64,000 nt of DNA from Podarcis erhardii (lineage: Eukaryota). Shown here in pieces: positions 19,510 through 39,953 of this stretch. The stretch is taken from NCBI GenBank assembly GCA_964252035.1, contig OZ176201.1; one strand, 5' to 3'. The first letter of the stretch is position 1; every line of letters begins with the position of its first letter. The notes beneath the pieces are model-generated. The model did not search any database and had not been told where the DNA came from. It worked only from the letters and a program-made list of their open reading frames with translations. The translations under genes were made by a program, and so were the position numbers.

Positions 19510-19837
19510 TGACTAACGTGGGGGTATGATGCTGAGCTACGTAGGTCTGAGTACCATCGTAGTGGACATTGTCCAAACCCATTGTTATTCAGAGTCATTT
19601 GTGCTCCTATTGAGCTGACCTCATTTGTCTGTAATTACCCCTGTTGAATAGCTGTGACACTGAAGTAGCAACTAAACTAGATTTTTATAGTATTAACTGG
19701 GGGGGTGTCTCGCTTTTACCCTGGCCTAGTGCAGCATTGTTTCAGCTCCCCCAGTTTCCCTATCCTAACCCTACCTCCATCTTCATGACTGTGCTTTCTC
19801 TCTTTCTATTTCTCTCTCTATCCCACCCCCTCAATAG

Positions 19838-19948
19838 TTCTACAATGCCACACCTGTATATGATCATCTGCTAAGGATGTTCAACATTGTCTTCACTTCC
19901 CTGTTCTCATTGGAGTGCATTCTGAAAATCATCGCCTTTGGATTGTTG
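19838..19948 (+). CDS. CACNA1A: CACNA1A exon 30 (IVS2: [37 protein letters not shown])
   Basis: aatag|TTC...TTG|gtaagt; 111 nt. Confidence 0.97.
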
Positions 19949-21019
19949 GTAAGTGTCACTCTTGCTAAACTTCATGAGAAATAATCATGAAGGCCTCCAC
20001 TACAGAGTGGGAGGAATATGACCCCCTTCCTCATGAAACAGGAAGGCGTATATTGCACCTTGGTTAGTTGTTGTTTTTAAAGAAAATTTTAATTTATTTG
20101 ATAATAATAATAATTTATTATTTATACCCTGCCCATCTGTCCCTCTACATGACTTAACAGAGCTCACAGGGCCCTCAGAGATCACACTGCTTATGGAAGC
20201 ATGGGAAGTAACAACATCTCACTCCTCCAGAGACAAACTGTACGTCTGCTGGAGGCCATGGATATAAACGGACTCATTTACAAAGGAGTCTGAAAAAAAT
20301 CACCAAATTTAGACTTTAGCTTCTCTTGCAACAGGGCTGCTCATGCCAGGACTCTTGGCTTCCTGTACAGGAAGCTATTTATTCACATTCAACTCTAGTT
20401 AAACTCTGACTTTTGCTACGCCCATGATTTAGAGAAGAGTATTTTTGGGCAGTGTCCAGGCTTGAATGTCGTAGTCAGAGAAAGAAAGAGGGGGCCTCCT
20501 AGGAGAGTGAGAAAGCAATAAATCTATACAAAGGTCAGTTAGTTGTTAGCTTCTTCTGCAACATGAATGTTCCATTCCAAGGGGTCCATCTCACCTCTCA
20601 TTTGAAAACTTTAATGCTCAGCAGCCAAACTTCAGAGCAGAAACTAAGTTGGTCTCTAGAAACACCATAGGTTCATGTGAATAATAAGTTTTCTTGTTAC
20701 ATGCAATATTGTGATAATAGCAGCTTTAGGAAATCTGATCACTGAAGGTTTTCTTCTAACATAGAGGCCAGCACCTGACAACACTTGGGCCAAATGCAAT
20801 CCCCTAAGCCATGTCATCTCTCTGTCTGCATCTCTGGTTGCTAAAACCAGAGGAAACACAAGGGTTTAAATGACCAGTGTCTATAGCAATGGAATGGTAG
20901 CAGATAGCAATGGGTAGCAGAACATTTTGAGGTGTTGGGCTTAGGGTCCATGGATAGCTGCCACTCCCAACTTCTCTACTCATCTTAAAGTGACCCTCCA
21001 AAAATAATAATCTTAATTT

Positions 21020-21115
21020 TAATTTAATTCTATTATAGATTCACCCACCCTTCACCACAAGGTCCCAGGGCAAGTTACAACAATATAAAAATACAATATT
21101 AAAACAATTTAGACC
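21020..21115 (-). mobile_element. L2-type 3' tail (antisense)
   Basis: atttaattctattatag...cccacccttcaccacaaggtcccagggcaagttacaac is the reverse complement of the tail seen at 42240-42318. Confidence 0.45.
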
Positions 21116-21881
21116 AAATTGCTGGCAAGGACTCTTTCAAGAACTTACTCATTCCTGACCCTGAACCACACTATTTGATATTCACTGTGATTGATGAGCT
21201 GAATTAATTTGCTTAGTAATAGCTCTGCCATTACTTAGTTAGGCTTTGGAGACAACTGGCATTCTCTCCTTAGAGAAGCCGAGCTGAAAAATGGAATAGT
21301 CCCCAGGTGTAGTCTTATTATTAGGCTTGTGTGTGTTGTATTTACTTTTATAGATGTTCTTGTGATTGTCCATGCAAATAACTGAGGAAGGGGAAAGATG
21401 TACAACTGCTTGCTCCTTGCTTGAGAGTGTCACAGCCCTTGGTCTCACTGGGCAGTTGCAATGCCTTAAGCGTTCACAGGGAGCAAATTGAAAGAAAACA
21501 ACCCTTCCCTCTCATCCTACTCTCACTCACTGAGGTCTGTTTCTGGCCAGTGGAAACAAATCCCATCGGCCTCTGAAAATTTGAGCTCAGCTGTTTTCAC
21601 TGACATAAGGTGACAAGACCTGCCACTTTATCCCCATTTCAGGAGGCAAAATGCATAAAGAAAAGCCCCCTAGCTAGTTTAGTTTTGCAATCCCCATCAC
21701 AAGAGCTGGAATGCACCCAAAAGGTAATCAGGACCTGAGTGGGGCAGGAGGGTGGGGGAATAGAAAAGGTGGATATTTCTCTGTTCTCGTTGCTGTTGCT
21801 TCCGTCGTGATTGAATGTTGTCACCTGTTTGCTGCTGTGTGGCTGTTCCTTTTCGTCCTTTGTTTTGTTCTTTCTTTATAG

Positions 21882-21977
<96 letters not shown>

Positions 21978-22705
21978 TGATGGTGGGGATGGCATTCTGG
22001 GGGTGGGAGGCATTCTGCAGGGAGTGGGAAGCAAGAACTGAAACATGAGGTTTTTATCCCATTGAACTGCATCCTTAACTAGGATAGGGGCTGGAGAATC
22101 CAGAGAATGGCAGTAAACATTATTTATTGGCTGCCAATGAACATAGTGCAGTGTTCCCTTTCTTCTTCAAGAACAGATTCTCAAAAGTGCATAACAGCCG
22201 CTCCCACATTTTCAATAACTCTTCAGTAAAATATGTATATTTGTGACAATCCTTGCTGTTGCTCAGCAAAAGGTGTAGGCTTCTTCTAAGGCCTTGACAC
22301 TGGTATTTATTGGGAATTTATTGGGAATTTCTCAAATTAGATAGTTACAGACTTAAAGATGCCAAAGTCACTCCATCGTATTGTTTACACCAGCATTAAC
22401 CCATAATCTTTGTAATAAGTTATAAATGCTGTATCCTTTCATTATGGCATTTGCCATCACCTGAAACAATAGAGTACGAAGGGCCACTTTGCACTTTACA
22501 GTGTGGATGCACAAATTAAAAGAATTAGTAACTAATACTATCGTTTCCAAACCAGTGGGCCAGAGCATTCTAGTGTGCCAAAAGAGAATCATTGATATGC
22601 TTCCAGAAATGAAATGATTCAGTTTCTTACTGTGAGCCCAAAGTTCCTGCCCACAACAGAGGAGGCTACCCACTTCAGCCCTCCATCCTTCATTACTCAG
22701 GTGTT

Positions 22706-22890
22706 CATAGAATCATAGATTTGGAAGGGATCCCAAGGGTTATCTAGTTCAACACCCTGCAATACAGAAATCTCATCTAGAGCGTCCATGATAGATGTCC
22801 ATCCAGCCTCTGCTTAAAAACCTCCAGGGAGGGAGAGTCCACAACCTCCCAAAGATGATCGTTCCACTGTCAAACAGCACTGTCAAACAG
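22706..22890 (-). mobile_element. CR1 LINE 3' end (antisense)
   Basis: catagaatcatag is the reverse complement of the (attctatg)n CR1 tail, followed by ttggaagggatcccaagggttatctagttcaac. Confidence 0.8.
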
Positions 22891-23436
22891 TGTTGCTTCT
22901 TTCCAAGCAGCTTCTGTTAAGAATCTATAATTCTACCACATCTCTCCATCTGGTGTGATTGGATTATTCAAGCACTCCTCAGTGCAGAGATGCAGCAGAA
23001 ACACATGTCCTTGGTGGAAGCTGCATGTTACATCTCTGCACTTGTTACTGTTCTGGGAAGCTGTTCTCCTTCTAGTCAGGAAGCCTGGCCAAAACAGTGA
23101 CTCTCAGAGAACACAACAGGGTGGGTTCCTTGGCAGGCAGGCAGGAAGGCAGGCAGGCAGTTTTTACTCTTACACATAATAAAATTCAACATATGGGGGG
23201 GGGTGTATGAGTCAGTGTACTTCCCATTTTAACTCAGAAACGTGTATCTCCCTTTTAAAACATTTAGAAATACTGATATACTCACTTCTATTCCATAGCA
23301 TGTTAGGTCATGTCTACACATGTTTGTATATCATAGACATATGTGTCAGGGGAAGGAGAGGGTAACCATGATCATCTGCAAAATGTTGGATTTCCTCAGT
23401 GTAACTGCAGTCGAAAGTAAAAGGCATTTTATCAGA

Positions 23437-23490
23437 CTAATACACCGTATTATACACCATATTATACACCGACTAATACACTAGGTACAC
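23437..23490. repeat. Short degenerate 12-bp tandem repeat (gactaatacacc / gtattatacacc)
   Basis: About four imperfect units seen directly. Confidence 0.6.
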
Positions 23491-24269
23491 CGTAAATCTT
23501 TAATGTGTACCTCCTTTTGCTGTAATGTGTGGAGTGGCCCCAAGTGGGATATACATGGTCAAATCTAAAGCCACTTTACAGAGGTTTTTTATAGAGGCAA
23601 CAACGAGGGTGAATCTTAATCCAAATAGATGCCATCACACAACAGAGCTTGTCCTCATGACTTCCAAAGAAGATTGTGTAAGGGCTGGCAGACTGTGCTT
23701 GGCATGGCAGCAGCTGGGGTGCCCAACTCCCTGCAGAAATCCTCTGAATTAGTTTTTCTCATGCACATCCCTCTATAACAGAGTTCAAGTTGCAGAAGGG
23801 GCTTGCAATCAGCATTCCCTCATTTTTTCCTCTCACCCTTATCCAGCCTTCAGAATGTAACAGGTGGCTGGGAGAGGGACATACTAGGCATGCCTTGGGG
23901 CTAAACTGTGCATGACTTGGAAGCCCCATGACCAGATCTCCCAATATCTTCTTTCTTTTTTCTTCAAAGCTGCATCTGAGAGTGGGGAGGGTTTCTAATT
24001 TGAGATGGGGGGGATTCCTATTTTACCTTTATGTAGTTATCAAAATGTATGTATTATTCACTTGGCAGAAAATCACTAAGCAGCTTACCAAAAAAATCAT
24101 TTTAAAAAGTCAATAAAAGCAAACAAGTTGACTTTTTTATCAAAATATAGATAAAATCAACCATTTTAATAAAATTACATGCGAAAGCTGCATGTTAAAA
24201 TTACAGGCTATTAGCAGGCAGAGAAAAATATACAACAAAGGTGCCTGCCTAATGTTCATGGGAAGAAAG

Positions 24270-24637
24270 TTGTTTATTTATTGCATTTCTATCCCACCTT
24301 TTTCTCCAAGGAGCTCAAATTGGCATACATGATTTTTCCCTTCCTCATTTAATGCCCTTCAACAATCCTGTGAGGTAGATTAGGTTAAGAGGCAGCAACT
24401 GACCCAGGGTCACCCAGTGAGATTCATGGGTAAGTGAAGATTTGAACCCTGTTCTCCCAGGTCCTGGTCCAACACTGACCCAGCCTTTCTTAACCTTGGG
24501 TTCCCAGATGTTCTTAAATTACAACTCCCACCATCCCTGACCATGCTGGCTAGGAATGATGGAAGTTGTAGCCCAACAACACCTGGGAACCCAAGGTTGA
24601 GAAAGGCTGCTCCAATCACTTCACTACACTGGCTCCC
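24270..24637 (-). mobile_element. Squam3-like SINE (antisense), interrupted by a MITE
   Basis: ttgtttatttattgcatttctatcccacc...gatttgaaccctg...ccaacactgacc | MITE | ...cactacactggctc (head resumes after the MITE). Confidence 0.7.
24481..24609. mobile_element. Short MITE with about 32-bp TIRs, nested in the SINE
   Basis: cagcctttcttaaccttgggttcccagatgtt ... aacacctgggaacccaaggttgagaaaggctg. Confidence 0.8.
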
Positions 24638-27285
24638 AGTGCTGCCATACTGAAGGATCAATTCCATGTGAGTCCTTCCTACCACCGTGAAGTTTCCCCA
24701 TTCAAACAAAGGTCTCTCCCTCTAAGCTACTGGGAAAAGTCCATATTGTACTTGTATTTTTGCCTCAGCTGGGCTAAAACCAACTGAGAGGTAATTTCAC
24801 TCAAGGAAACAGCATAGAGAGAATTTATCTCCTTCAATGTTGCTCCCTTATGCTGTTTCCCTAGTCAAAATAACAGTCCCTTTAAGTAGCTTTGAAGAAA
24901 AGTAAAAGAGCTTAGGGAGATTTGATCACGGATCTCCCATGTCATAAGTAGCTTAGCCCACAGTGAGATGTGGAGCAGGGGAAGATATCTGAATGAACAT
25001 CCTGAAATGATACAGAGCCATGACAAATTCAGGGAATTGGCAGAACAACCCACCCATTCAAAGGCTAATGTGCTTCCAGCAGGAATAGACCAGGGAAACT
25101 GAGGCATTAACCTTGGAAAGGCTTCCATAAGTTTTATGGCACAACCAGGCATGGAGAGACTTGTTTCCAATTGCCTACAATAACTGCAAAATCCTTCTGT
25201 CAGTTTTGTCCAGAACGCTTTGATGGTGATAATTTTCTTTACCCTTGGTCTTGGGAAGTACACAGCACAGCAAACTCTTTCTTACTAAAATTATTCTGTC
25301 ATGGCCTTTGGCTAGAACATGAAACATGTGAACTACTAAAATTATCAGGAAAGGTCTTTCCCAGAGAATATGCATGCATGGCAAACTATTCCAAAATGCC
25401 CATGTGTGTGCACTGTATGTGTACCAAGGGAGCATATGTATTACTTATGCACATTTCCTCACAGGTGATGAGGGTGTTTAAAGAACACCCATTCTTCTAG
25501 ATTTCTCAATATGGCATAGTGATTCATTTCTGTTTGACCTAAAGGGTTATTTAAATTTACTTTGACAAAGGAATGGCACTACACTGAACAGTTTAGCTAT
25601 GTACTGAGAACACTTCAAATGAGGATTGCAAAAGCTAGTGCTGGCCTTCAAAGTGTCTTGTCAAAGCAAAATGTTGCAATGTGGAGTGTTGTTGCTCAGG
25701 ACACTAACCACTTGGTTCCATCGCAGCCTCGGTTCCTACCCTCCAATAGTCTGTTAATGTTCTGTGGCCACTAAATATGCTCAGGAACCCCCCAGACTGC
25801 TGTGGGTGGGGGGTTTCCATATGTGTTCTGCAACACGTCATTGATGCTTTAATAGTGCATTAGTGGTGGATTTATATTGTACCAGCCGCACATCTTCTGT
25901 TTTTTTAAGTTATTCTACGATTCTTTCCCAGTGTTTTCTGGAGGGGCACTCTTGCACTATAACACAACAAAAATGGGACCAACACCCTACCCCCTGAACA
26001 GCTGGTATAAAAAGTTACAGGATTTTGGCAAGACACTATAGGACATGGATAGACTGGAAACGAAGCAATATGTCTGCCCCAAATTTTTTGTAAGCGTGAA
26101 CAGTATCAAAAGCAGAGTAGCTGCCCCAGCATAGTCATGAGCACAAATCATAAATGCACAATAAAAAGGCATCTAGAGGTGCAGGAAATCTCCCCCCACC
26201 ATCCAAGAGCAGAACGTCAGTTAGGAGATAAAATCTGAGACCTTCCAGAGACAATGCAAAACTTCCAGTATAAATAGGTATGAACTCCTCATTGTGCTCC
26301 ACATTCTGAATGGATCTCTTTCTTTAGCGCAAGTTGTACAACCACCAATACCATTTTGGGTTATTATGCCTTTTTTCAGTCTTTTATCTTGGGGCCAAAC
26401 TAGACCTGATGTAGGAGATTCATGATCAGGATCTTCCATGGTTTAGGCTTCTGTTTTGTTTTTTTTCTAATTAGACTAGCAGTCCCATATGGGAAAGGCC
26501 TGTATGGGAAGTGGGTTTCCCAATCTAAATTCCCACCATCCAAAGGAGATTTAAAATGAACCCATACGTTCTGCTTAGAACACAGTAGGTATTTCAACCC
26601 TGTGGTTGCTAGGTCATCTCTTTTACTACAGCTGTGGTGTACATTTGTTCTGCCACTTATTTGTATATGGGTGATCTTTTCCAAGTAGTTAGGCTTCCAC
26701 ACATTTCCAGTATGCTTGGATGGCCATTTGTATGGCTGCTCTAAGAGCAAGTGAAAGTTACCTACAAGTAGCTTGAATTACAAGGGGCCTTCCTGTAATT
26801 GTACTGTTTGCTTTGAATGCCCAAACTCTTTGAACATTGCAACTTTGTATTATGCAACTTTGTTCATATAGCATTTCTTTGAGTACTTACCACACTGAAA
26901 GATGGGGAAATTAGGTCACTCCAACAAGTTTCACATTTTAGAAGGTGGTAGTCTAAGGACACATAGTGCTCAGACTCAGAGAAGTGACCTCACAGATGGG
27001 TTTTGAAGAACTGTGTTGGTAAGTAACTTTCATTAATAGCACTGACTCATGGAAGTCCCTGTTCCAATATGTGCCTCAGTTTCCCTCTCTCACTTACCTC
27101 CCAGAATAATATGGATGGGTCAACAAAAGTTTTGTTTATGCTGGAAGCCTGTAGGTAAAGCCAAACGTGTAGATATTTTGGTTAGGAAGATCAGAATGCT
27201 AAAGTCATGGATTCCCTAAATTCCAGAAAGACAGATGAAAGGGGTGAGTGTGGGAGAAGGGTGGGCTAGGGGTCTCCTTCCCCAG

Positions 27286-27615
27286 GGCTATGTATGATAT
27301 ATAATGACTTTGTCTTTTGTCTTCTTTCCATGCTGTCTCTTTATATTGTTCTATTTTGGCGCAACACCCTCTGAAAATCTCATCCAATCAAAATGCACTA
27401 TGAAAAATCCATCTGTCCATCCATGAACTGGTCTGTGTGTCCATGCTAATGAATATTTCTGAACTTCCCTGCCCTGATCCCTCTCCCATCACCAAAAATG
27501 AAATCACTGCCTTCTGCATTTCTCCATTTGCTGGTTGGAACTCAACTTGCGGTATTAAAACACCCACCCTTCCCTGACCTTCTCTGATCCTCTCCATCTC
27601 AATGTTTGCATCTAG
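27286..27615 (+). promoter_or_regulatory. AG-exclusion zone, YCAY cluster and 3' splice site of microexon e31a
   Basis: No AG between 27286 and 27613, about 11 YCAY between 27380 and 27597, and TGC at 27607-27609. Confidence 0.7.
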
Positions 27616-27621
27616 GATCCG
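27616..27621 (+). CDS. CACNA1A: CACNA1A alternative microexon e31a (6 nt, phase 0, GAT CCG = Asp-Pro) in the IVS3-S4 linker
   Basis: tttgcatctag|GATCCG|gttggt, located in the intron between exons 31 and 32; homologous to the mammalian NP (AATCCG) exon. Confidence 0.8.
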
Positions 27622-30600
27622 GTTGGTTTGATTACTTTCTCAAGCCTAAGTGCCTTACATTAATCAAAAGCATCTTCTTGGCGCATTGCATGATCTTTTG
27701 AGCCAAAGATGCCTGCAGTTTACTGGGCAGCTTCCGCTTTTAGTCCCCCCACTTACCCCATTTTGTGTCACTTATTTTATTCAGATTCACATCTGGCTTC
27801 CAGTAACCCCATAGCAGGGATGTGGTATATATGCTGGCTGTTTGCCATAATAAACATTGATTGATTGATTGGTGATGCCAATCTCTGAAGAGATGATTGC
27901 ATTTAATCTAAGACTTGCATCAGTATGGATAGGCTTTCTAAAAGGATATGGTGGTAGATAGAAAGCTGTATCTGCAAGTTGCTGGGTTCTGACCCAGGGC
28001 CAGTGTCAGTTTCTGTCTGGGGGAAAACGTGGGATGGGAATTCAACATGCAAGTGCCTTACTTGATGACATACAAAACCTGATGACAGTTTGCATGGGTG
28101 GAGCATCCACCACAGTTGAAATACTACAGATACTTTGCATAGCATCTGGCATCACCTCCAGGCACATAGTTTTTGCAGTGTGTGCGCAGTCAAATAGAAG
28201 ACCTAAAAATCCCACTTGTCAATAGCTATCTGAACAAGTACAGAAAAGCCCTGCACCCCCAGCTTCATTCTGCGTGCCCAGGCATGCCCATTCACTCAAA
28301 ACTTTTCACATTTAACCTTCCCTTAATGCATACAACTTTAGCTGGGTATCCACTTACCACCTAAACACAACACACAACACAACACATTTCCTCACACATG
28401 AACTGACCCTAAGGTCCTCTCAGCGATATTAAGATTCTCCATACACTTTCAGCCATGCACAGACAACCTCTGCTTTGGTCAGTTGAGGTAGAACAATTCC
28501 TTAGAAGAAGTAAAATATCATTATAACTATGGAAATTAGCCCAAGCCCATTTAGGAGTATTGAGAGGGATATTAACATCCCTTTTCCTGAGAGTCAGTTG
28601 TGGAGGGTGAGTCAAAGAGAAATCCTTAATTTTATTTCTGTGGGCCACATTCAGTCTTACTTTTCTAACACACACCAATACTCCTCTTAAGATTAGGGTA
28701 GACATTAATTTTGAAAGATTGCATGTGCGTCCGTTTCACATATTTAACAAAATCTCAAGAGGAATCTGTTGAGAAAACTTCTTCAAAATGAAACAGACAT
28801 ATATATAATAAATATAAATCAAATTGAAACAGACATACATCACAGACACAATGCATAGCTTGAAGCAGTGATGCCTCCTATACTGGTTGGCTGACTTGGT
28901 ACAATGATCTAAATATTCAGTTGCTGAAAGGACATTGCTACTTAAAAGTCCAGCTTTTCTGAGGGAGGGTAAATTGACAGTTTGACTGAAGAAATCTTGG
29001 CCTGTAGTGAAGCTTAGTGATAAAGTGTTCAGAAGAAGGGAGGCAGAATGAATGGTACAGAGTAGGAAATGGACCGAAAGCAGGGAATCTGAAGGAAGGG
29101 TAGGTGAGCTAGGAAAAAGCAGCAACGGGAGTTGAGGCAAAAAAGAAAAGGAGGAGGCGGCAGTGAAGAAATTCTACAATGTGTAAGATCAAGAGGCAGG
29201 TGTATGGTGTATGTTTGGGGCAGGAGAGTGCTAGGACTGTTAGCCAAAAGAGGCAGGATGAATAAAAAGTGTGGGGCAAAGTAGAGTGGACTGAAAAAAT
29301 GCAATAAAATTTGTAGCTGGAGACATGGAATGGAACTGAAGAAAGTAGGTTACAAGAAGAAAGCTGAGCTAGGACTGTGGATTTTGTCTGAAAGGAAATG
29401 AGCAGGCAAGAGAGGTTTGGAGGCCTAGAGACAGTGGAACTGGGGGGGGGGGGCGTGTTTCTAGATCTAGTCTGACACAGGTTTCCACCGGTTAAATAGT
29501 TTACTTTCACTGCATTATTGTGTCCTGGAATAAGATTCAAAAGGCAAGGGGCAGAGCTGAAATATATATATTGGTTTAAACAAAAGAGCTAAATATTTTG
29601 GCTGAAAGATTGTCCACTTAAGATAGTGACCTTAGAATAGGCTTAAAAAGTAATGTAGGAAGTGAACTTTGGAATAAAGGTGGTTAATAGGAAAGAGAGA
29701 ATGGTGTGTGGCACCATTCCTAATGGTCTGTGTGGGCATATATTTCCAACTGGAAATGGGTGTGGGTCCCCTGCCTGTCTCTCTTTCCCTCTGCATGAAT
29801 ATCATTCTTTGTTTGTCCTGCATGATCTGAGCATGGCAGTTTTAATAAACTGGTTTCACCCCATTGTATGTGTCACAGAGCCACCTCCACTACTGCCACC
29901 ATGCATGTCCACTGAAATCCCAATTAGAGGAACAGCCTTTTTGGAGGGTTGGAGAAGGATGGGCTTATAGCTTCTGGGAACACACATGCAAACACATGCA
30001 TATAAAGAGTGAAGATGCAGCAATTAGGTTTCTTTTTGGAAGAGAAAATAAATCCTATTACAGTACATGGATATATTTGGCTGCAAGAACCACACTGTAT
30101 GTCCACTGTGTTATCACACACTTATAATGTCCACTGTGTAACTGCATGGCAATTCCTCAGTCTTTGTTTTATAATTATAGAGCAAGGCATTTGGCAAGCC
30201 GGTACATGTTGAGTGGTCACACCAATCTTTTGGCATGTGTATTGCCTGAGTCTTTTTCGTGCAGTTTTCTTTGGAGTTTGTGTATGAGGGGCGCTGTAGC
30301 ACAGGTACTTTCATGAGTCTTGAGGGAGATGTTGGTGCAACTACATTCATTCCTGTGATGCATGTTGCATAGGTATCCCTACACACTCAATCCGCCAGAT
30401 CACTTGCACTGTTTAGTGTACTATGGTGAAGCCACATGGTAATTCTCTTTGGAACTGTTAGAGCCAGCCAGGTTGTCCCTTTACAGTGTTCTCATTGCTT
30501 GAACATGCAATTCTGGTTCCAGTGAGATCAAAGTGTGGTTCCATTGAGTTCAATATCGAAACCCAGGGAAGGTCCATGGTGCATAGATTACTAAATCACT

Positions 30601-31492
30601 TAACCGTTCATACTGGGGCTAAAATACAGGTTCCTGTTCAAGGGCTTTTGCCCAGGGATAAAGCTCATGTGTTTCTTACATGAGTTTCTTACATGTTTCT
30701 TACATTTTGTATCTAAGTTTATCTTTTTCTGTGCTAGGCCCTTCTTCCAACCTTTACTGGAACTCTTTTTTAGAAAGTGTCTGAAGGTCTCAGTGGTAGT
30801 TACTAGAGATACACAAACACATACATCAATATTCTATTGTCCAAACTCAGGTGATATCCTAACCCTCAGAAACCTTGGGCATCTTTCGCCCTCAGGGGCT
30901 GTGGGTGTCTGGCCATAGAACACTTTGCAACTAAGAAGTACATTGTCACACTTCAATGTATTCATTTTATCCCAGAAGCTTATATGCCATTTCCTCTGAA
31001 GGAGACAGATAAAAATGCATCTTGGTGAACCCAACAGGAGAATGTTTTTCCTATCTTGCCAGAATCACAAATCCTTCTTTTAGCTACAAATTTGTTGAAC
31101 TAAGCTCTTCCTTCAGAGCTTGGGGTGTGGCCCAACACCTGTTGGTTGCACAGAACAGATGCATTTTCCATTGAGAATGATATGATAGCAAGTCTCCAGA
31201 CATTTCTCAGCTCTCCTCTTCCTCACTGGCACTTGTCTTGCTTTCTCCTCTCTCCAGATTTGTGTGCACAGAACATGTGTGATGTGAGGCCACACAATAA
31301 TGTTCTGTCTGCTTGTGTCAAAAAATATCAGTGCATTTGGTTGTGGGTATATTTTTAAAAAATGTAATCATGTGCTAATGAATTATCACTGATTTTCCAA
31401 ATGGATGATTTTCCAAGTAGAGGGGTGGCCTTATTATCATGCTAATTTTCTTCATGTGTGTGATCCCTCTCCCTTTCTTTGCTATTCAGTGA

Positions 31493-31771
<279 letters not shown>

Positions 31772-32347
31772 TGAGATTTGAAGTTGTGGGTGGTTGAGAG
31801 AGAAAGGGAGGGAAGTAGTAGGAGTGCAGAAAGTTTAGGAGATTATAGCTAGAGACATCCAACCTCATCCATCTACCTGTTTATTTCTCCATTCATTCAC
31901 CACCTCTTATCATGCACTTTGAATCATGAATACTTTCTTTCATGTTGTTGAAGTTGAATCATGTTTCATGAGTAGCTTTCCATTAACTCACCCTTTTGCA
32001 TGGGTAAGTAATCACTGCAAGATTTCTGTAGTCAGGATGGGATGTGGCAGGGATTGGAGGAAGAGTGATAGAGTCTACAACAGCCTTCTTCAACATGGTG
32101 CCCTCCAGTTGACTCCCATCCTCCTTCATTCCTGACCATTGACCATACTGACTGAGGCTGATGGTAGTTGTAGGGCAGCAGGATGGGGAAGATTGGCCTA
32201 CAAGCAATCTCTTTCATTGATTCAGTGACAGCAATCAGTTTGTAAGAAGAAGGGAGCCATATTCCCAGTAAAACAAGTGTGGTACACACACACAAAATGT
32301 GAAACTTAAAAAAATAATAATGTATGCTCATGTTTTTCCCTCACTAG

Positions 32348-32413
32348 GCCCTTCCGTATGTGTGTCTGCTGATTGCAATGCTCTTCTTCATTTATGCGAT
32401 TATTGGAATGCAG
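32348..32413 (+). CDS. CACNA1A: CACNA1A exon 33 (IVS5: [22 protein letters not shown])
   Basis: cactag|GCC...CAG|gtaagt; 66 nt. Confidence 0.98.
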
Positions 32414-38757: not shown

Positions 38758-38919
<162 letters not shown>

Positions 38920-39856
38920 TGACTTACACTAAAACCTGCTAGCATCAACGGAATGAATGTTGCTTATGATTTCTTTAATATATATATTTCATATATATAT
39001 ATCTATATATATCTGTACACATACCTATCTATATATATTGCACTTTCAAGAGTAATTTAATGTAATTAGCCAACAGAATGCGTGAAATGATGCTGCCACC
39101 CAGACCAGTAACGCATGGAGCATACCGGTTACCTTGAACCATCTCTGCTTGCTGTTAGCTGGAGCTAGGCCTGGAGGGTTCTATGAGTCTCTCTCTCTCT
39201 ACTCACCTCCACCACTCTCTGCACATTAATACTTCATTTGGGGAGGACAGAGACTCCATTGACACCTCTGCCATTTCCCCCCCTCCCCTCCCCACTTCTT
39301 TCCACCCCCCTTTCCCTCCACCTTCTCTTCCTGCACTCTGCCCTCCTCCCACATTGGCAAAGAGGGGCTTTCTCATCTCAATCTGTCTTTCTCTTTCTCT
39401 CCTTCTTTCTGTGGATCTTCATTACTAAGAGGACCTGACTCTGCACTCCTTGGCCCTATAAGCCCATGGAGGATTGTGATCTGCATTTATAACCTGAGGC
39501 TGAGTAAACTAGATGGAGGCACATGCTTAAGTTAAACCTGTCCCTTTTGCAATGGGAACGCTAGCTCTGTAAGTACGGAGCTTGCACTTAAGCATTTTGC
39601 TGGATCAAGGCAGTTTGAGGAGCCATCTTTCTACTCCCAGTCGTCCATGAAGATCAAGCATATTTGAACTCTTGGCTGACAAGCAGCACAGTAATCTTTA
39701 CATTTTTATCTTCCATTTTTTTCTTTTCCAATTGATTTCCAATATTTTTCTCTTCTTTGCATCTCTCTCTCTTTTCTATTTTTCTGTGTATTTTTTCCTT
39801 TTTTAATTATTATTAATTTTTTTTGGTTGTTTTTATTTTTAATTTTTTGCTCCCAG

Positions 39857-39953
39857 GGGCCGGATGACTTTCATGGACATGTATGAGATGCTGAGACACA
39901 TGTCTCCACCCCTGGGGCTAGGGAAGAAATGCCCTGCCCGTGTTGCTTATAAG
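39857..39953 (+). CDS. CACNA1A: CACNA1A mutually exclusive exon 37b (EFb: [33 protein letters not shown])
   Basis: tcccag|G...AAG|gtagaa; 97 nt; paralogous to 37a. Confidence 0.97.

What the first reader, a model, noticed from the sequence alone, without database searches (positions are those of the whole stretch)
27616..27621. The P/Q-type switch microexon encodes Asp-Pro instead of Asn-Pro
Seen: tag|GATCCG|gttggt. Established: in mammals the 6-nt e31a (AATCCG, NP) in the IVS3-S4 paddle lowers omega-agatoxin IVA affinity and shifts gating, contributing to the P versus Q distinction. Inference: this lizard inserts a negatively charged Asp at a gating-modifier toxin site, which could change voltage sensing and spider-toxin sensitivity in a probably arthropod-eating animal. 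The G also improves the acceptor context (AG|G).
Basis: partly seen in the sequence, partly recalled or inferred. Interest (0 to 1): 0.75.

Follow-up and report, generated by a model that had tools for sequence, protein, structure and literature searches.

The report
Lizard Cav2.1 microexon encodes Asp-Pro

Summary

The match alone is weak: the chance of such a site in this intron is about 0.2. Comparison settles it.
- The exon sits in the best-conserved island of the intron.
- A Gekko genome has the same ag|GATCCG|gttgg.
- A snapping turtle has ag|AATCCG|gttgg in alignable flanks (E 1e-176 and 5e-65).
- A UGC at -9 of the acceptor and a UGCAUG about 65 nt downstream are invariant in all three.
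- Two public RefSeq models carry TEFG-DP-NNFI: Gekko japonicus XP_015274358.1 and Lacerta agilis X23 XP_032995645.1.

So the G is not a sequencing error. Asp-Pro is squamate-wide, and Asn-Pro is the older state (turtle codons, mammal proteins).

Two birds have lost the exon (introns of 96 and 145 nt). One rattlesnake has no trace of the island.

The toxin and gating idea is untested. It is weakened by the paralogue Cav2.2, which carries an acidic residue (ET or DT) at the same site.

This is a new member of a known kind, of modest interest.

The parts
21882..21965 (+). IVS3 exon of Cav2.1 (mammalian exon 31 equivalent), ends ..DILVTEFG, donor gtaagt
   Evidence: tblastn of Lacerta agilis Cav2.1 X23 ends here at residue 1736.
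27298..27469 (+). Almost invariant upstream intronic block (lizard, gecko, turtle) holding several position-conserved YCAY motifs; candidate splicing-regulator platform
   Evidence: Alignment A1; blastn E 1e-176 to gecko and 5e-65 to turtle. The YCAY count is only modestly above background.
27573..27615 (+). Pyrimidine-rich acceptor region with candidate branch points (ctgac, ctgat), a UGC at 27607-27609 (-9 of the exon) and the acceptor AG
   Evidence: UGC at -9 and the AG are invariant in all three species.
27616..27621 (+). 6-nt microexon GATCCG = Asp-Pro; positions 2-6 are invariant, position 1 is G in lizard and gecko and A in turtle
   Evidence: DP is present in protein models P0490 and P0507.
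27622..27629 (+). Weak donor gttggttt (GTTGG invariant in three species)
27687..27692 (+). UGCAUG (RBFOX-type motif) 66 nt downstream of the donor, inside an invariant GCATTGCATGA
   Evidence: offsets +66, +61 and +64 in lizard, gecko and turtle.
31610..31726 (+). IVS4 exon of Cav2.1 (exon 32 equivalent), [39 protein letters not shown]
   Evidence: tblastn of P0507 resumes here at residue 1739.

Best explanation
GATCCG at 27616-27621 is the squamate orthologue of the 6-nt cassette microexon e31a of CACNA1A. When included between the IVS3 and IVS4 exons it inserts Asp-Pro after ..TEFG in the extracellular S3-S4 linker of voltage-sensor domain IV. This is the position where mammals insert Asn-Pro.

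The exon is recognised through a conserved architecture:
- a pyrimidine tract with a UGC 9 nt before the acceptor (the SRRM4-type microexon signal);
- a deliberately weak donor (GTTGG);
- a UGCAUG about 65 nt downstream (RBFOX-type enhancer position);
- a roughly 170-nt nearly invariant upstream block that contains YCAY motifs (NOVA-type silencer position).

The A-to-G change that turns Asn into Asp arose on the squamate stem, at or before the gecko-lacertid split, and has been kept since. The turtle keeps the Asn-Pro codons.

Shown here: the sequence, the frame, orthology within reptiles, conservation, and presence in two public protein models.

Inferred: that the exon is alternatively included in neurons, which factors control it, and that DP acts like NP (slower activation, lower omega-agatoxin IVA affinity) mainly by lengthening the linker.
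For: - Sequence and frame.
- Only [N/D]P-coding ag|N6|gt site in the intron.
- Turtle (Chelydra, L004 22815) has ...catctcaacatctgcatctag|AATCCG|gttggttt. Gekko (L005 27236) has ...catctcaacatctgcacctag|GATCCG|gttggtta.
- Island alignments: window 26989-27777 to Gekko (76% over 824 nt, E 1e-176) and window 27259-27658 to turtle (73% over 427 nt, E 5e-65). These are among very few alignable parts of the intron.
- Invariant AG, GT, UGC at -9 and UGCAUG at +61 to +66.
- Protein models with TEFG-DP-NNFI: Gekko japonicus XP_015274358.1 (P0490) and Lacerta agilis X23 XP_032995645.1 (P0507). In P0507, DP sits exactly between the two window exons.
- Mammal Cav2.1 representatives with TEFG-NP-NNFIN: 47.
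- PMC5279877: e31a is 6 bases coding NP in Cav2.1 and ET in Cav2.2, and both slow activation.
- PMC5633781: Nova2 promotes e31a exclusion in Cacna1b.
- PMC7235277: nSR100 acts through UGC elements near 3' splice sites.
Against:
- RefSeq models can be driven by homology, so they do not prove expression.
- Most annotated squamate isoforms seen here lack the insert (Heteronotia X1-X4, Thamnophis, Crotalus, Liasis, Zootoca X1, Anolis). So do all turtle, alligator and salamander models.
- Flank homology to the mammalian exon was not shown directly. Mammal loci exceed the 100-kb limit.
- YCAY enrichment is weak: 6-7 per 211 nt against an intron mean of about 4.
- One snake and two birds lack the exon, so it is dispensable in some sauropsids.
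Confidence: 0.85

Rival explanations
1. The conserved island is an intronic regulatory element (a splicing or transcription control region, or a relic of the exon). In squamates the 6 nt are no longer spliced into mRNA. The DP in the two RefSeq models is then an artefact of homology-guided prediction.
For: - No read evidence.
- Most squamate and all turtle models lack the insert, even though the turtle genome keeps a perfect ag|AATCCG|gt.
- The strongest conservation lies 150-320 nt upstream of the exon rather than on it.
Against: - AG, GT, the exact 6-nt spacing, five of six exon bases, the UGC at -9 and the downstream UGCAUG are all invariant over roughly 270 My. That pattern is expected for a used exon and not required for a mere enhancer.
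- Gene predictors routinely miss 6-nt exons, so absence from models is weak evidence.
- Lineages that really lost the exon (birds, rattlesnake) lost the whole island.
Confidence: 0.08
2. Chance occurrence: one of about 51 random ag|N6|gt sites in a long intron happens to resemble AATCCG.
For: The expected number of sites within one mismatch of AATCCG is about 0.24.
Against: The site is orthologous and embedded in an island conserved with gecko and turtle at E 1e-176 and 5e-65. nhmmer with a profile built from the three-species alignment re-finds the gecko and turtle islands (its own members) and nothing else in the fetched loci.
Confidence: 0.01
3. The Asn-to-Asp change is adaptive. The added negative charge on the domain IV paddle alters gating or the binding of spider gating-modifier toxins in squamates. 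This rival concerns function only and is compatible with the best explanation of what the element is.
For: - Position 1 is the only variable base of an otherwise frozen exon, and G has been kept in two squamate lineages that split about 190 My ago.
- The insert lies next to the Glu of TEFG, which is needed for high-affinity omega-agatoxin IVA block (PMC7939481).
Against: - Cav2.2 carries Glu or Asp at the same inserted position in all amniotes seen, so an acidic residue here is ordinary for the family.
- From memory (Lin et al. 1999, not held): NP substitutes functionally for ET in Cav2.2.
- Other lineages vary at this site without a known consequence: NS in Pipistrellus, SP in Latimeria.
- Birds and a rattlesnake do without the exon.
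Confidence: 0.12

Closest known systems
Mammalian CACNA1A exon 31a (also written 31*), the 6-nt NP cassette of the IVS3-S4 linker that contributes to the P-type versus Q-type difference
   Same: - Same gene and same intron (between the IVS3 and IVS4 exons).
- Same 6-nt length and phase, same Pro codon position, and insertion after TEFG.
- The turtle orthologue codes NP, exactly as the mammalian proteins do.
   Different: - The first codon is GAT (Asp) rather than Asn.
- Inclusion, tissue pattern and functional effect are not measured in any reptile.
- Homology of the flanking intron to mammals was not shown here.
CACNA1B (Cav2.2) exon 31a, the 6-nt ET cassette at the paralogous site
   Same: - Paralogous position and length.
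- An acidic first residue: ET in therians, DT in platypus and sauropsids.
- Slows activation (PMC5279877).
- Repressed by Nova2 (PMC5633781).
   Different: - A different gene: the linker context is TEIA rather than TEFG.
- The second residue is Thr, not Pro.
- Cav2.2 is not the omega-agatoxin IVA target.
SRRM4/nSR100-dependent neuronal microexons
   Same: Length within 3-27 nt, frame-preserving, located in a surface loop, with a UGC immediately upstream of the acceptor and deeply conserved flanking intron (PMC7235277).
   Different: SRRM4 dependence was not tested. At 6 nt it is at the extreme short end of the class.

Membership tests
CACNA1A (Cav2.1) gene | Exon sequences and the TEFG linker signature of Cav2.1 rather than Cav2.2 (TEIA) | tested here: met
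   - Window exons are about 100% identical to Lacerta agilis Cav2.1 X23.
- TEFG appears in Cav2.1 and TEIA in Cav2.2 across 120 proteins.
- The best PDB match of that model is Cav2.1, entries 8x90, 8x91 and 8x93.
Cav2 exon 31a microexon | Lies in the intron between the IVS3 and IVS4 exons, 6 nt, phase 0, AG/GT flanks | tested here: met
Cav2 exon 31a microexon | Codes Asn-Pro (the Cav2.1 form) | tested here: not met
   It codes Asp-Pro (GAT CCG). Pro is kept and Asn is replaced. The turtle orthologue codes Asn-Pro.
Cav2 exon 31a microexon | Orthology shown by conserved flanking intron | tested here: met
   Met within reptiles: gecko E 1e-176, turtle E 5e-65. Not testable against mammals, because their loci are over 100 kb and no DNA was returned.
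Cav2 exon 31a microexon | Alternatively included in neuronal mRNA | tested here: inconclusive
   Two RefSeq models include DP and many squamate models do not. Read-level evidence was unavailable.
Cav2 exon 31a microexon | Inclusion slows activation and lowers omega-agatoxin IVA affinity | not testable with these tools
   Needs electrophysiology. Only literature for mammalian NP and ET is available (PMC5279877).
SRRM4-type neuronal microexon | UGC motif within about 20 nt upstream of the acceptor, length 3-27 nt, frame-preserving | tested here: met
   UGC at -9 is invariant in lizard, gecko and turtle.
SRRM4-type neuronal microexon | Inclusion depends on SRRM4 | not testable with these tools
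   No expression or perturbation data are available here.

The most novel reading that the evidence does not exclude
Squamates have run for about 190 My a Q-type-like Cav2.1 isoform whose domain IV paddle carries an extra acidic residue. This changes gating or the affinity of spider-type gating-modifier toxins relative to the Asn-Pro form kept by turtles and mammals. Snakes and birds then dispensed with the switch altogether.
Probability: 0.12. Interest if true: 0.55.

Novelty: new member of a known kind. Interest (0 to 1): 0.3.

Why it matters
The finding shows that the two-residue P/Q switch exon, studied only in mammals, is an old amniote feature. Its splice sites and nearby motifs have stayed frozen for about 270 My.

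It gives a natural single-residue variant (Asp for Asn) and natural knock-outs (birds, a rattlesnake). These could be used to ask whether insert length or insert chemistry sets gating and omega-agatoxin sensitivity.

For annotation, it flags a real coding microexon that most reptile gene models omit, including every turtle model seen here.

It does not reveal a new mechanism.

Tried and rejected
- Joined model: the exon31-microexon-exon32 model was not built or searched. Exons were handled one by one, by reference.
- Read-through ORF fragments around the IVS4 exon: the relative P0016 sits on a 1.5-kb Logan contig that does not reach the microexon.
- Loci that returned no DNA because the gene range exceeds 100 kb: Gekko japonicus, Galeopterus, Alligator. 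Anolis X12 was not on record.
- Skink Lerista (L006): the 10 kb upstream of the IVS4 exon holds neither the IVS3 exon nor the island, so it is inconclusive.
- A whole-length protein search timed out and was not counted.
- The second cluster look-up was largely redundant.
- Papers not held: Allen 2010, Li 2024, Lin 1999 and a Lipscombe review.
- No paper linking lizards, Cav2.1 and agatoxin to this site was found.
- Rfam finds nothing in the island.
- The NOVA-cluster idea is only weakly supported, because the YCAY count is near background.
- No contig was taken for human, and none was fetched.

Full report
**Observation**

The window reads ...caatgtttgcatctag|GATCCG|gttggtttg... with GATCCG at 27616-27621.

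Motif scans of the six-frame translation place two Cav2-type exons on the + strand:
- One ends at 21965...GAG TTT GGG|gtaagt, translating to [28 protein letters not shown].
- One starts at 31610: AAC AAC TTC..., translating to [39 protein letters not shown].

The intron between them is 9644 nt.

**Is it more than chance?**

On its own, no. The intron contains 51 ag|N6|gt sites. About 0.24 sites within one mismatch of AATCCG are expected, a chance of roughly 0.2.

The site is the only one that codes [N/D]-P. The single AATCCG in the intron (30389) has no splice-site flanks, which removes the 'different AATCCG exon' alternative. The case therefore rests on comparison with other genomes.

**Gene identity**

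Exons across the window match Lacerta agilis Cav2.1 isoform X23 at essentially 100% (54/54, 67/67, 36/36, 37/37 and so on). The window is therefore from a lacertid-like lizard.

Among 120 Cav2 proteins, TEFG marks Cav2.1 and TEIA marks Cav2.2. The solved structures closest to that model are Cav2.1 entries 8x90, 8x91 and 8x93.

**Protein survey**

A search with a mammalian +NP Cav2.1 (Echinops, region of the two exons) listed every cluster representative scoring at or above the no-insert level. The linkers were:

| Group | Linker | Count or source |
|---|---|---|
| Mammalian Cav2.1 | TEFG-NP-NNFIN | 47 representatives, all mammals |
| Pipistrellus kuhlii Cav2.1 | TEFG-NS-NN | 5 isoforms |
| Latimeria cacna1a-b X3 | TEIG-SP-NN | 1 |
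| Sorex, Vombatus Cav2.1 | TEFG-VS-NN (read-through of the GTAAGT donor) | 2 |
| Sauropsid Cav2.1 representatives | no insert | all those listed |
| Any representative with DP | none | 0 |

Opening the squamate clusters then showed two public models with TEFG-DP-NNFI:
- Gekko japonicus XP_015274358.1 (P0490);
- Lacerta agilis X23 XP_032995645.1 (P0507).

In P0507 the DP (residues 1737-1738) falls exactly between the two window exons.

Other squamate models lack the insert: Heteronotia X1-X4, Thamnophis, Crotalus, Liasis, Zootoca X1 and Anolis. All turtle, alligator and salamander models seen also lack it.

In Cav2.2 the paralogous insert is ET in therian mammals and DT in platypus, turtles, crocodilians, lizards and birds.

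**Genomic comparison**

Orthologous DNA could be fetched for six loci:

| Species | Locus | Intron | Result |
|---|---|---|---|
| Gekko sp. (GCA_051903775.1) | L005 | 20410-32406 | ...catctcaacatctgcacctag\|GATCCG\|gttggtta at 27236 |
| Chelydra serpentina | L004 | 19649-27215 | ...catctcaacatctgcatctag\|AATCCG\|gttggttt at 22815 |
| Crotalus adamanteus | L003 | 14.3 kb, complete, no N | no [N/D]P candidate and no trace of the island |
| Eudromia elegans | L002 | 145 nt | no room for a microexon |
| Passer montanus | L007 | 96 nt | no room for a microexon |
| Lerista edwardsae | L006 | not reached | inconclusive: 10 kb upstream reaches neither the IVS3 exon nor the island |

The lizard region 26989-27777 aligns to Gekko at 76% over 824 nt (E 1e-176). 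The region 27259-27658 aligns to turtle at 73% over 427 nt (E 5e-65). Almost nothing else in the intron aligns to turtle.

For the rattlesnake, local alignment scored no better than shuffled sequence. An nhmmer profile of the island found nothing at E of 10 or less. Flanking parts of that intron do align.

**Anatomy**

The three-way alignment (A1) and motif positions show:
- a roughly 170-nt nearly invariant block at window 27298-27469, 150-320 nt upstream of the exon;
- an invariant acceptor context with a UGC at -9;
- exon positions 2-6 invariant, including the silent third base of the Pro codon;
- an invariant weak donor GTTGG;
- an invariant GCATTGCATGA holding a UGCAUG at +66, +61 and +64 in lizard, gecko and turtle.

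Exon position 1 is the only variable exon base: G in both squamates, A in turtle.

YCAY motifs are position-conserved in the upstream block. Their count (6-7 per 211 nt) is only modestly above the intron mean of about 4, so a NOVA cluster is a lead and not a finding. Rfam finds no known RNA family here.

**Mechanism**

Shown:
- a phase-0, 6-nt exon with conserved splice sites;
- conserved over the lepidosaur-turtle split (about 270 My, from general knowledge of amniote divergence times);
- coded into two public squamate protein models.

Inferred:
- It is a neuron-regulated cassette.
- The UGC at -9 is the signal through which nSR100/SRRM4 promotes microexons (PMC7235277).
- A UGCAUG about 65 nt downstream is in the position where RBFOX proteins enhance inclusion (general knowledge).
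- Nova2 is reported to promote exclusion of e31a in Cacna1b (PMC5633781, citing Allen 2010, which is not held).

At protein level the insert lengthens the IVS3-S4 linker just after the Glu of TEFG. That Glu is needed for high-affinity omega-agatoxin IVA block (PMC7939481). e31a is described as six bases coding NP in Cav2.1 and ET in Cav2.2, and both slow activation (PMC5279877).

**Asp versus Asn**

Parsimony makes Asn-Pro ancestral for amniotes: NP in mammal proteins, AATCCG in turtle, GATCCG in gecko and lizard. The change to Asp is then a squamate-stem substitution, kept at least since the gecko-lacertid split (about 190 My, general knowledge).

It is therefore not a trait of 'this lizard' and not a sequencing error.

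Whether the charge matters is open:
- For: it is the only base that changed in a frozen exon, and it lies next to a toxin-binding residue.
- Against: the paralogue carries Glu or Asp at the same place.
- Against: other lineages show NS and SP.
- Against: by my recollection of the abstract of Lin et al. 1999 (J Neurosci 19:5322, not held, so unverified here), NP can functionally replace ET in Cav2.2. That points to length rather than chemistry.

I put about 0.12 on a distinct functional effect of Asp.

**Limits**

- I did not build or search the joined exon-microexon-exon model.
- RefSeq models may be guided by homology.
- Homology of the island to the mammalian e31a flanks was not shown, because mammal loci were too long to be returned.
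I confirmed only the NP residues.
- No human contig was fetched or used.

**Verdict**

This is a real, deeply conserved orthologue of a known microexon. Its Asp-for-Asn variant is squamate-wide, already present in public gene models, and apparently undescribed in the papers searched. It is a new member of a known kind, of modest interest. The comparative pattern (NP in turtle, DP in squamates, loss in birds and a rattlesnake) is a useful by-product.

Noticed in passing
L003:47273-61536 (Crotalus adamanteus, intron between the IVS3 and IVS4 exons): The rattlesnake intron is complete (14.3 kb, no N) but holds no e31a-like microexon and no trace of the conserved island. This suggests loss of the P/Q switch exon in at least this snake.
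   Followed up: partly
L002:18928-19072 (Eudromia elegans) and L007:2134-2229 (Passer montanus): In two birds the same intron has collapsed to 145 and 96 nt with no microexon. The whole tinamou CACNA1A gene spans only about 32 kb.
   Followed up: yes
L004:22815-22820 (Chelydra serpentina): The turtle genome keeps a perfect ag|AATCCG|gt (Asn-Pro) with conserved flanks, yet none of the turtle gene models seen includes it. It is probably an unannotated coding microexon.
   Followed up: partly
window 31800-32060: The densest YCAY cluster of the whole 64-kb window (14 per 200 nt, against a mean of 3.9) lies just downstream of the IVS4 exon. It is a possible NOVA-type site.
   Followed up: no
window 31228-31408: This is the second of only two intron blocks that align between lizard and turtle (75% over 182 nt, E 2e-25), about 200-380 nt upstream of the IVS4 exon.
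   Followed up: no
proteins P0316-P0320, P0321, P0334, P0350: Other natural variants occur at the same site: NS in Pipistrellus kuhlii and SP in Latimeria cacna1a-b X3. Sorex and Vombatus models show VS, which looks like use of a donor 6 nt downstream (read-through of GTAAGT) and gives the same 2-residue lengthening by another route.
   Followed up: no
Cav2.2 proteins (for example P0266, P0330, P0373, P0374, P0382): The paralogous Cav2.2 insert is ET in therian mammals but DT, followed by DN instead of NN, in sauropsids. Platypus has DT followed by NN.
   Followed up: no
window 38821-38916 and 39849-39953: Two tandem exons match the same residues of Cav2.1 (about 1929-1963 of the Lacerta model). 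These are the known mutually exclusive EF-hand exons 37a and 37b.
   Followed up: no
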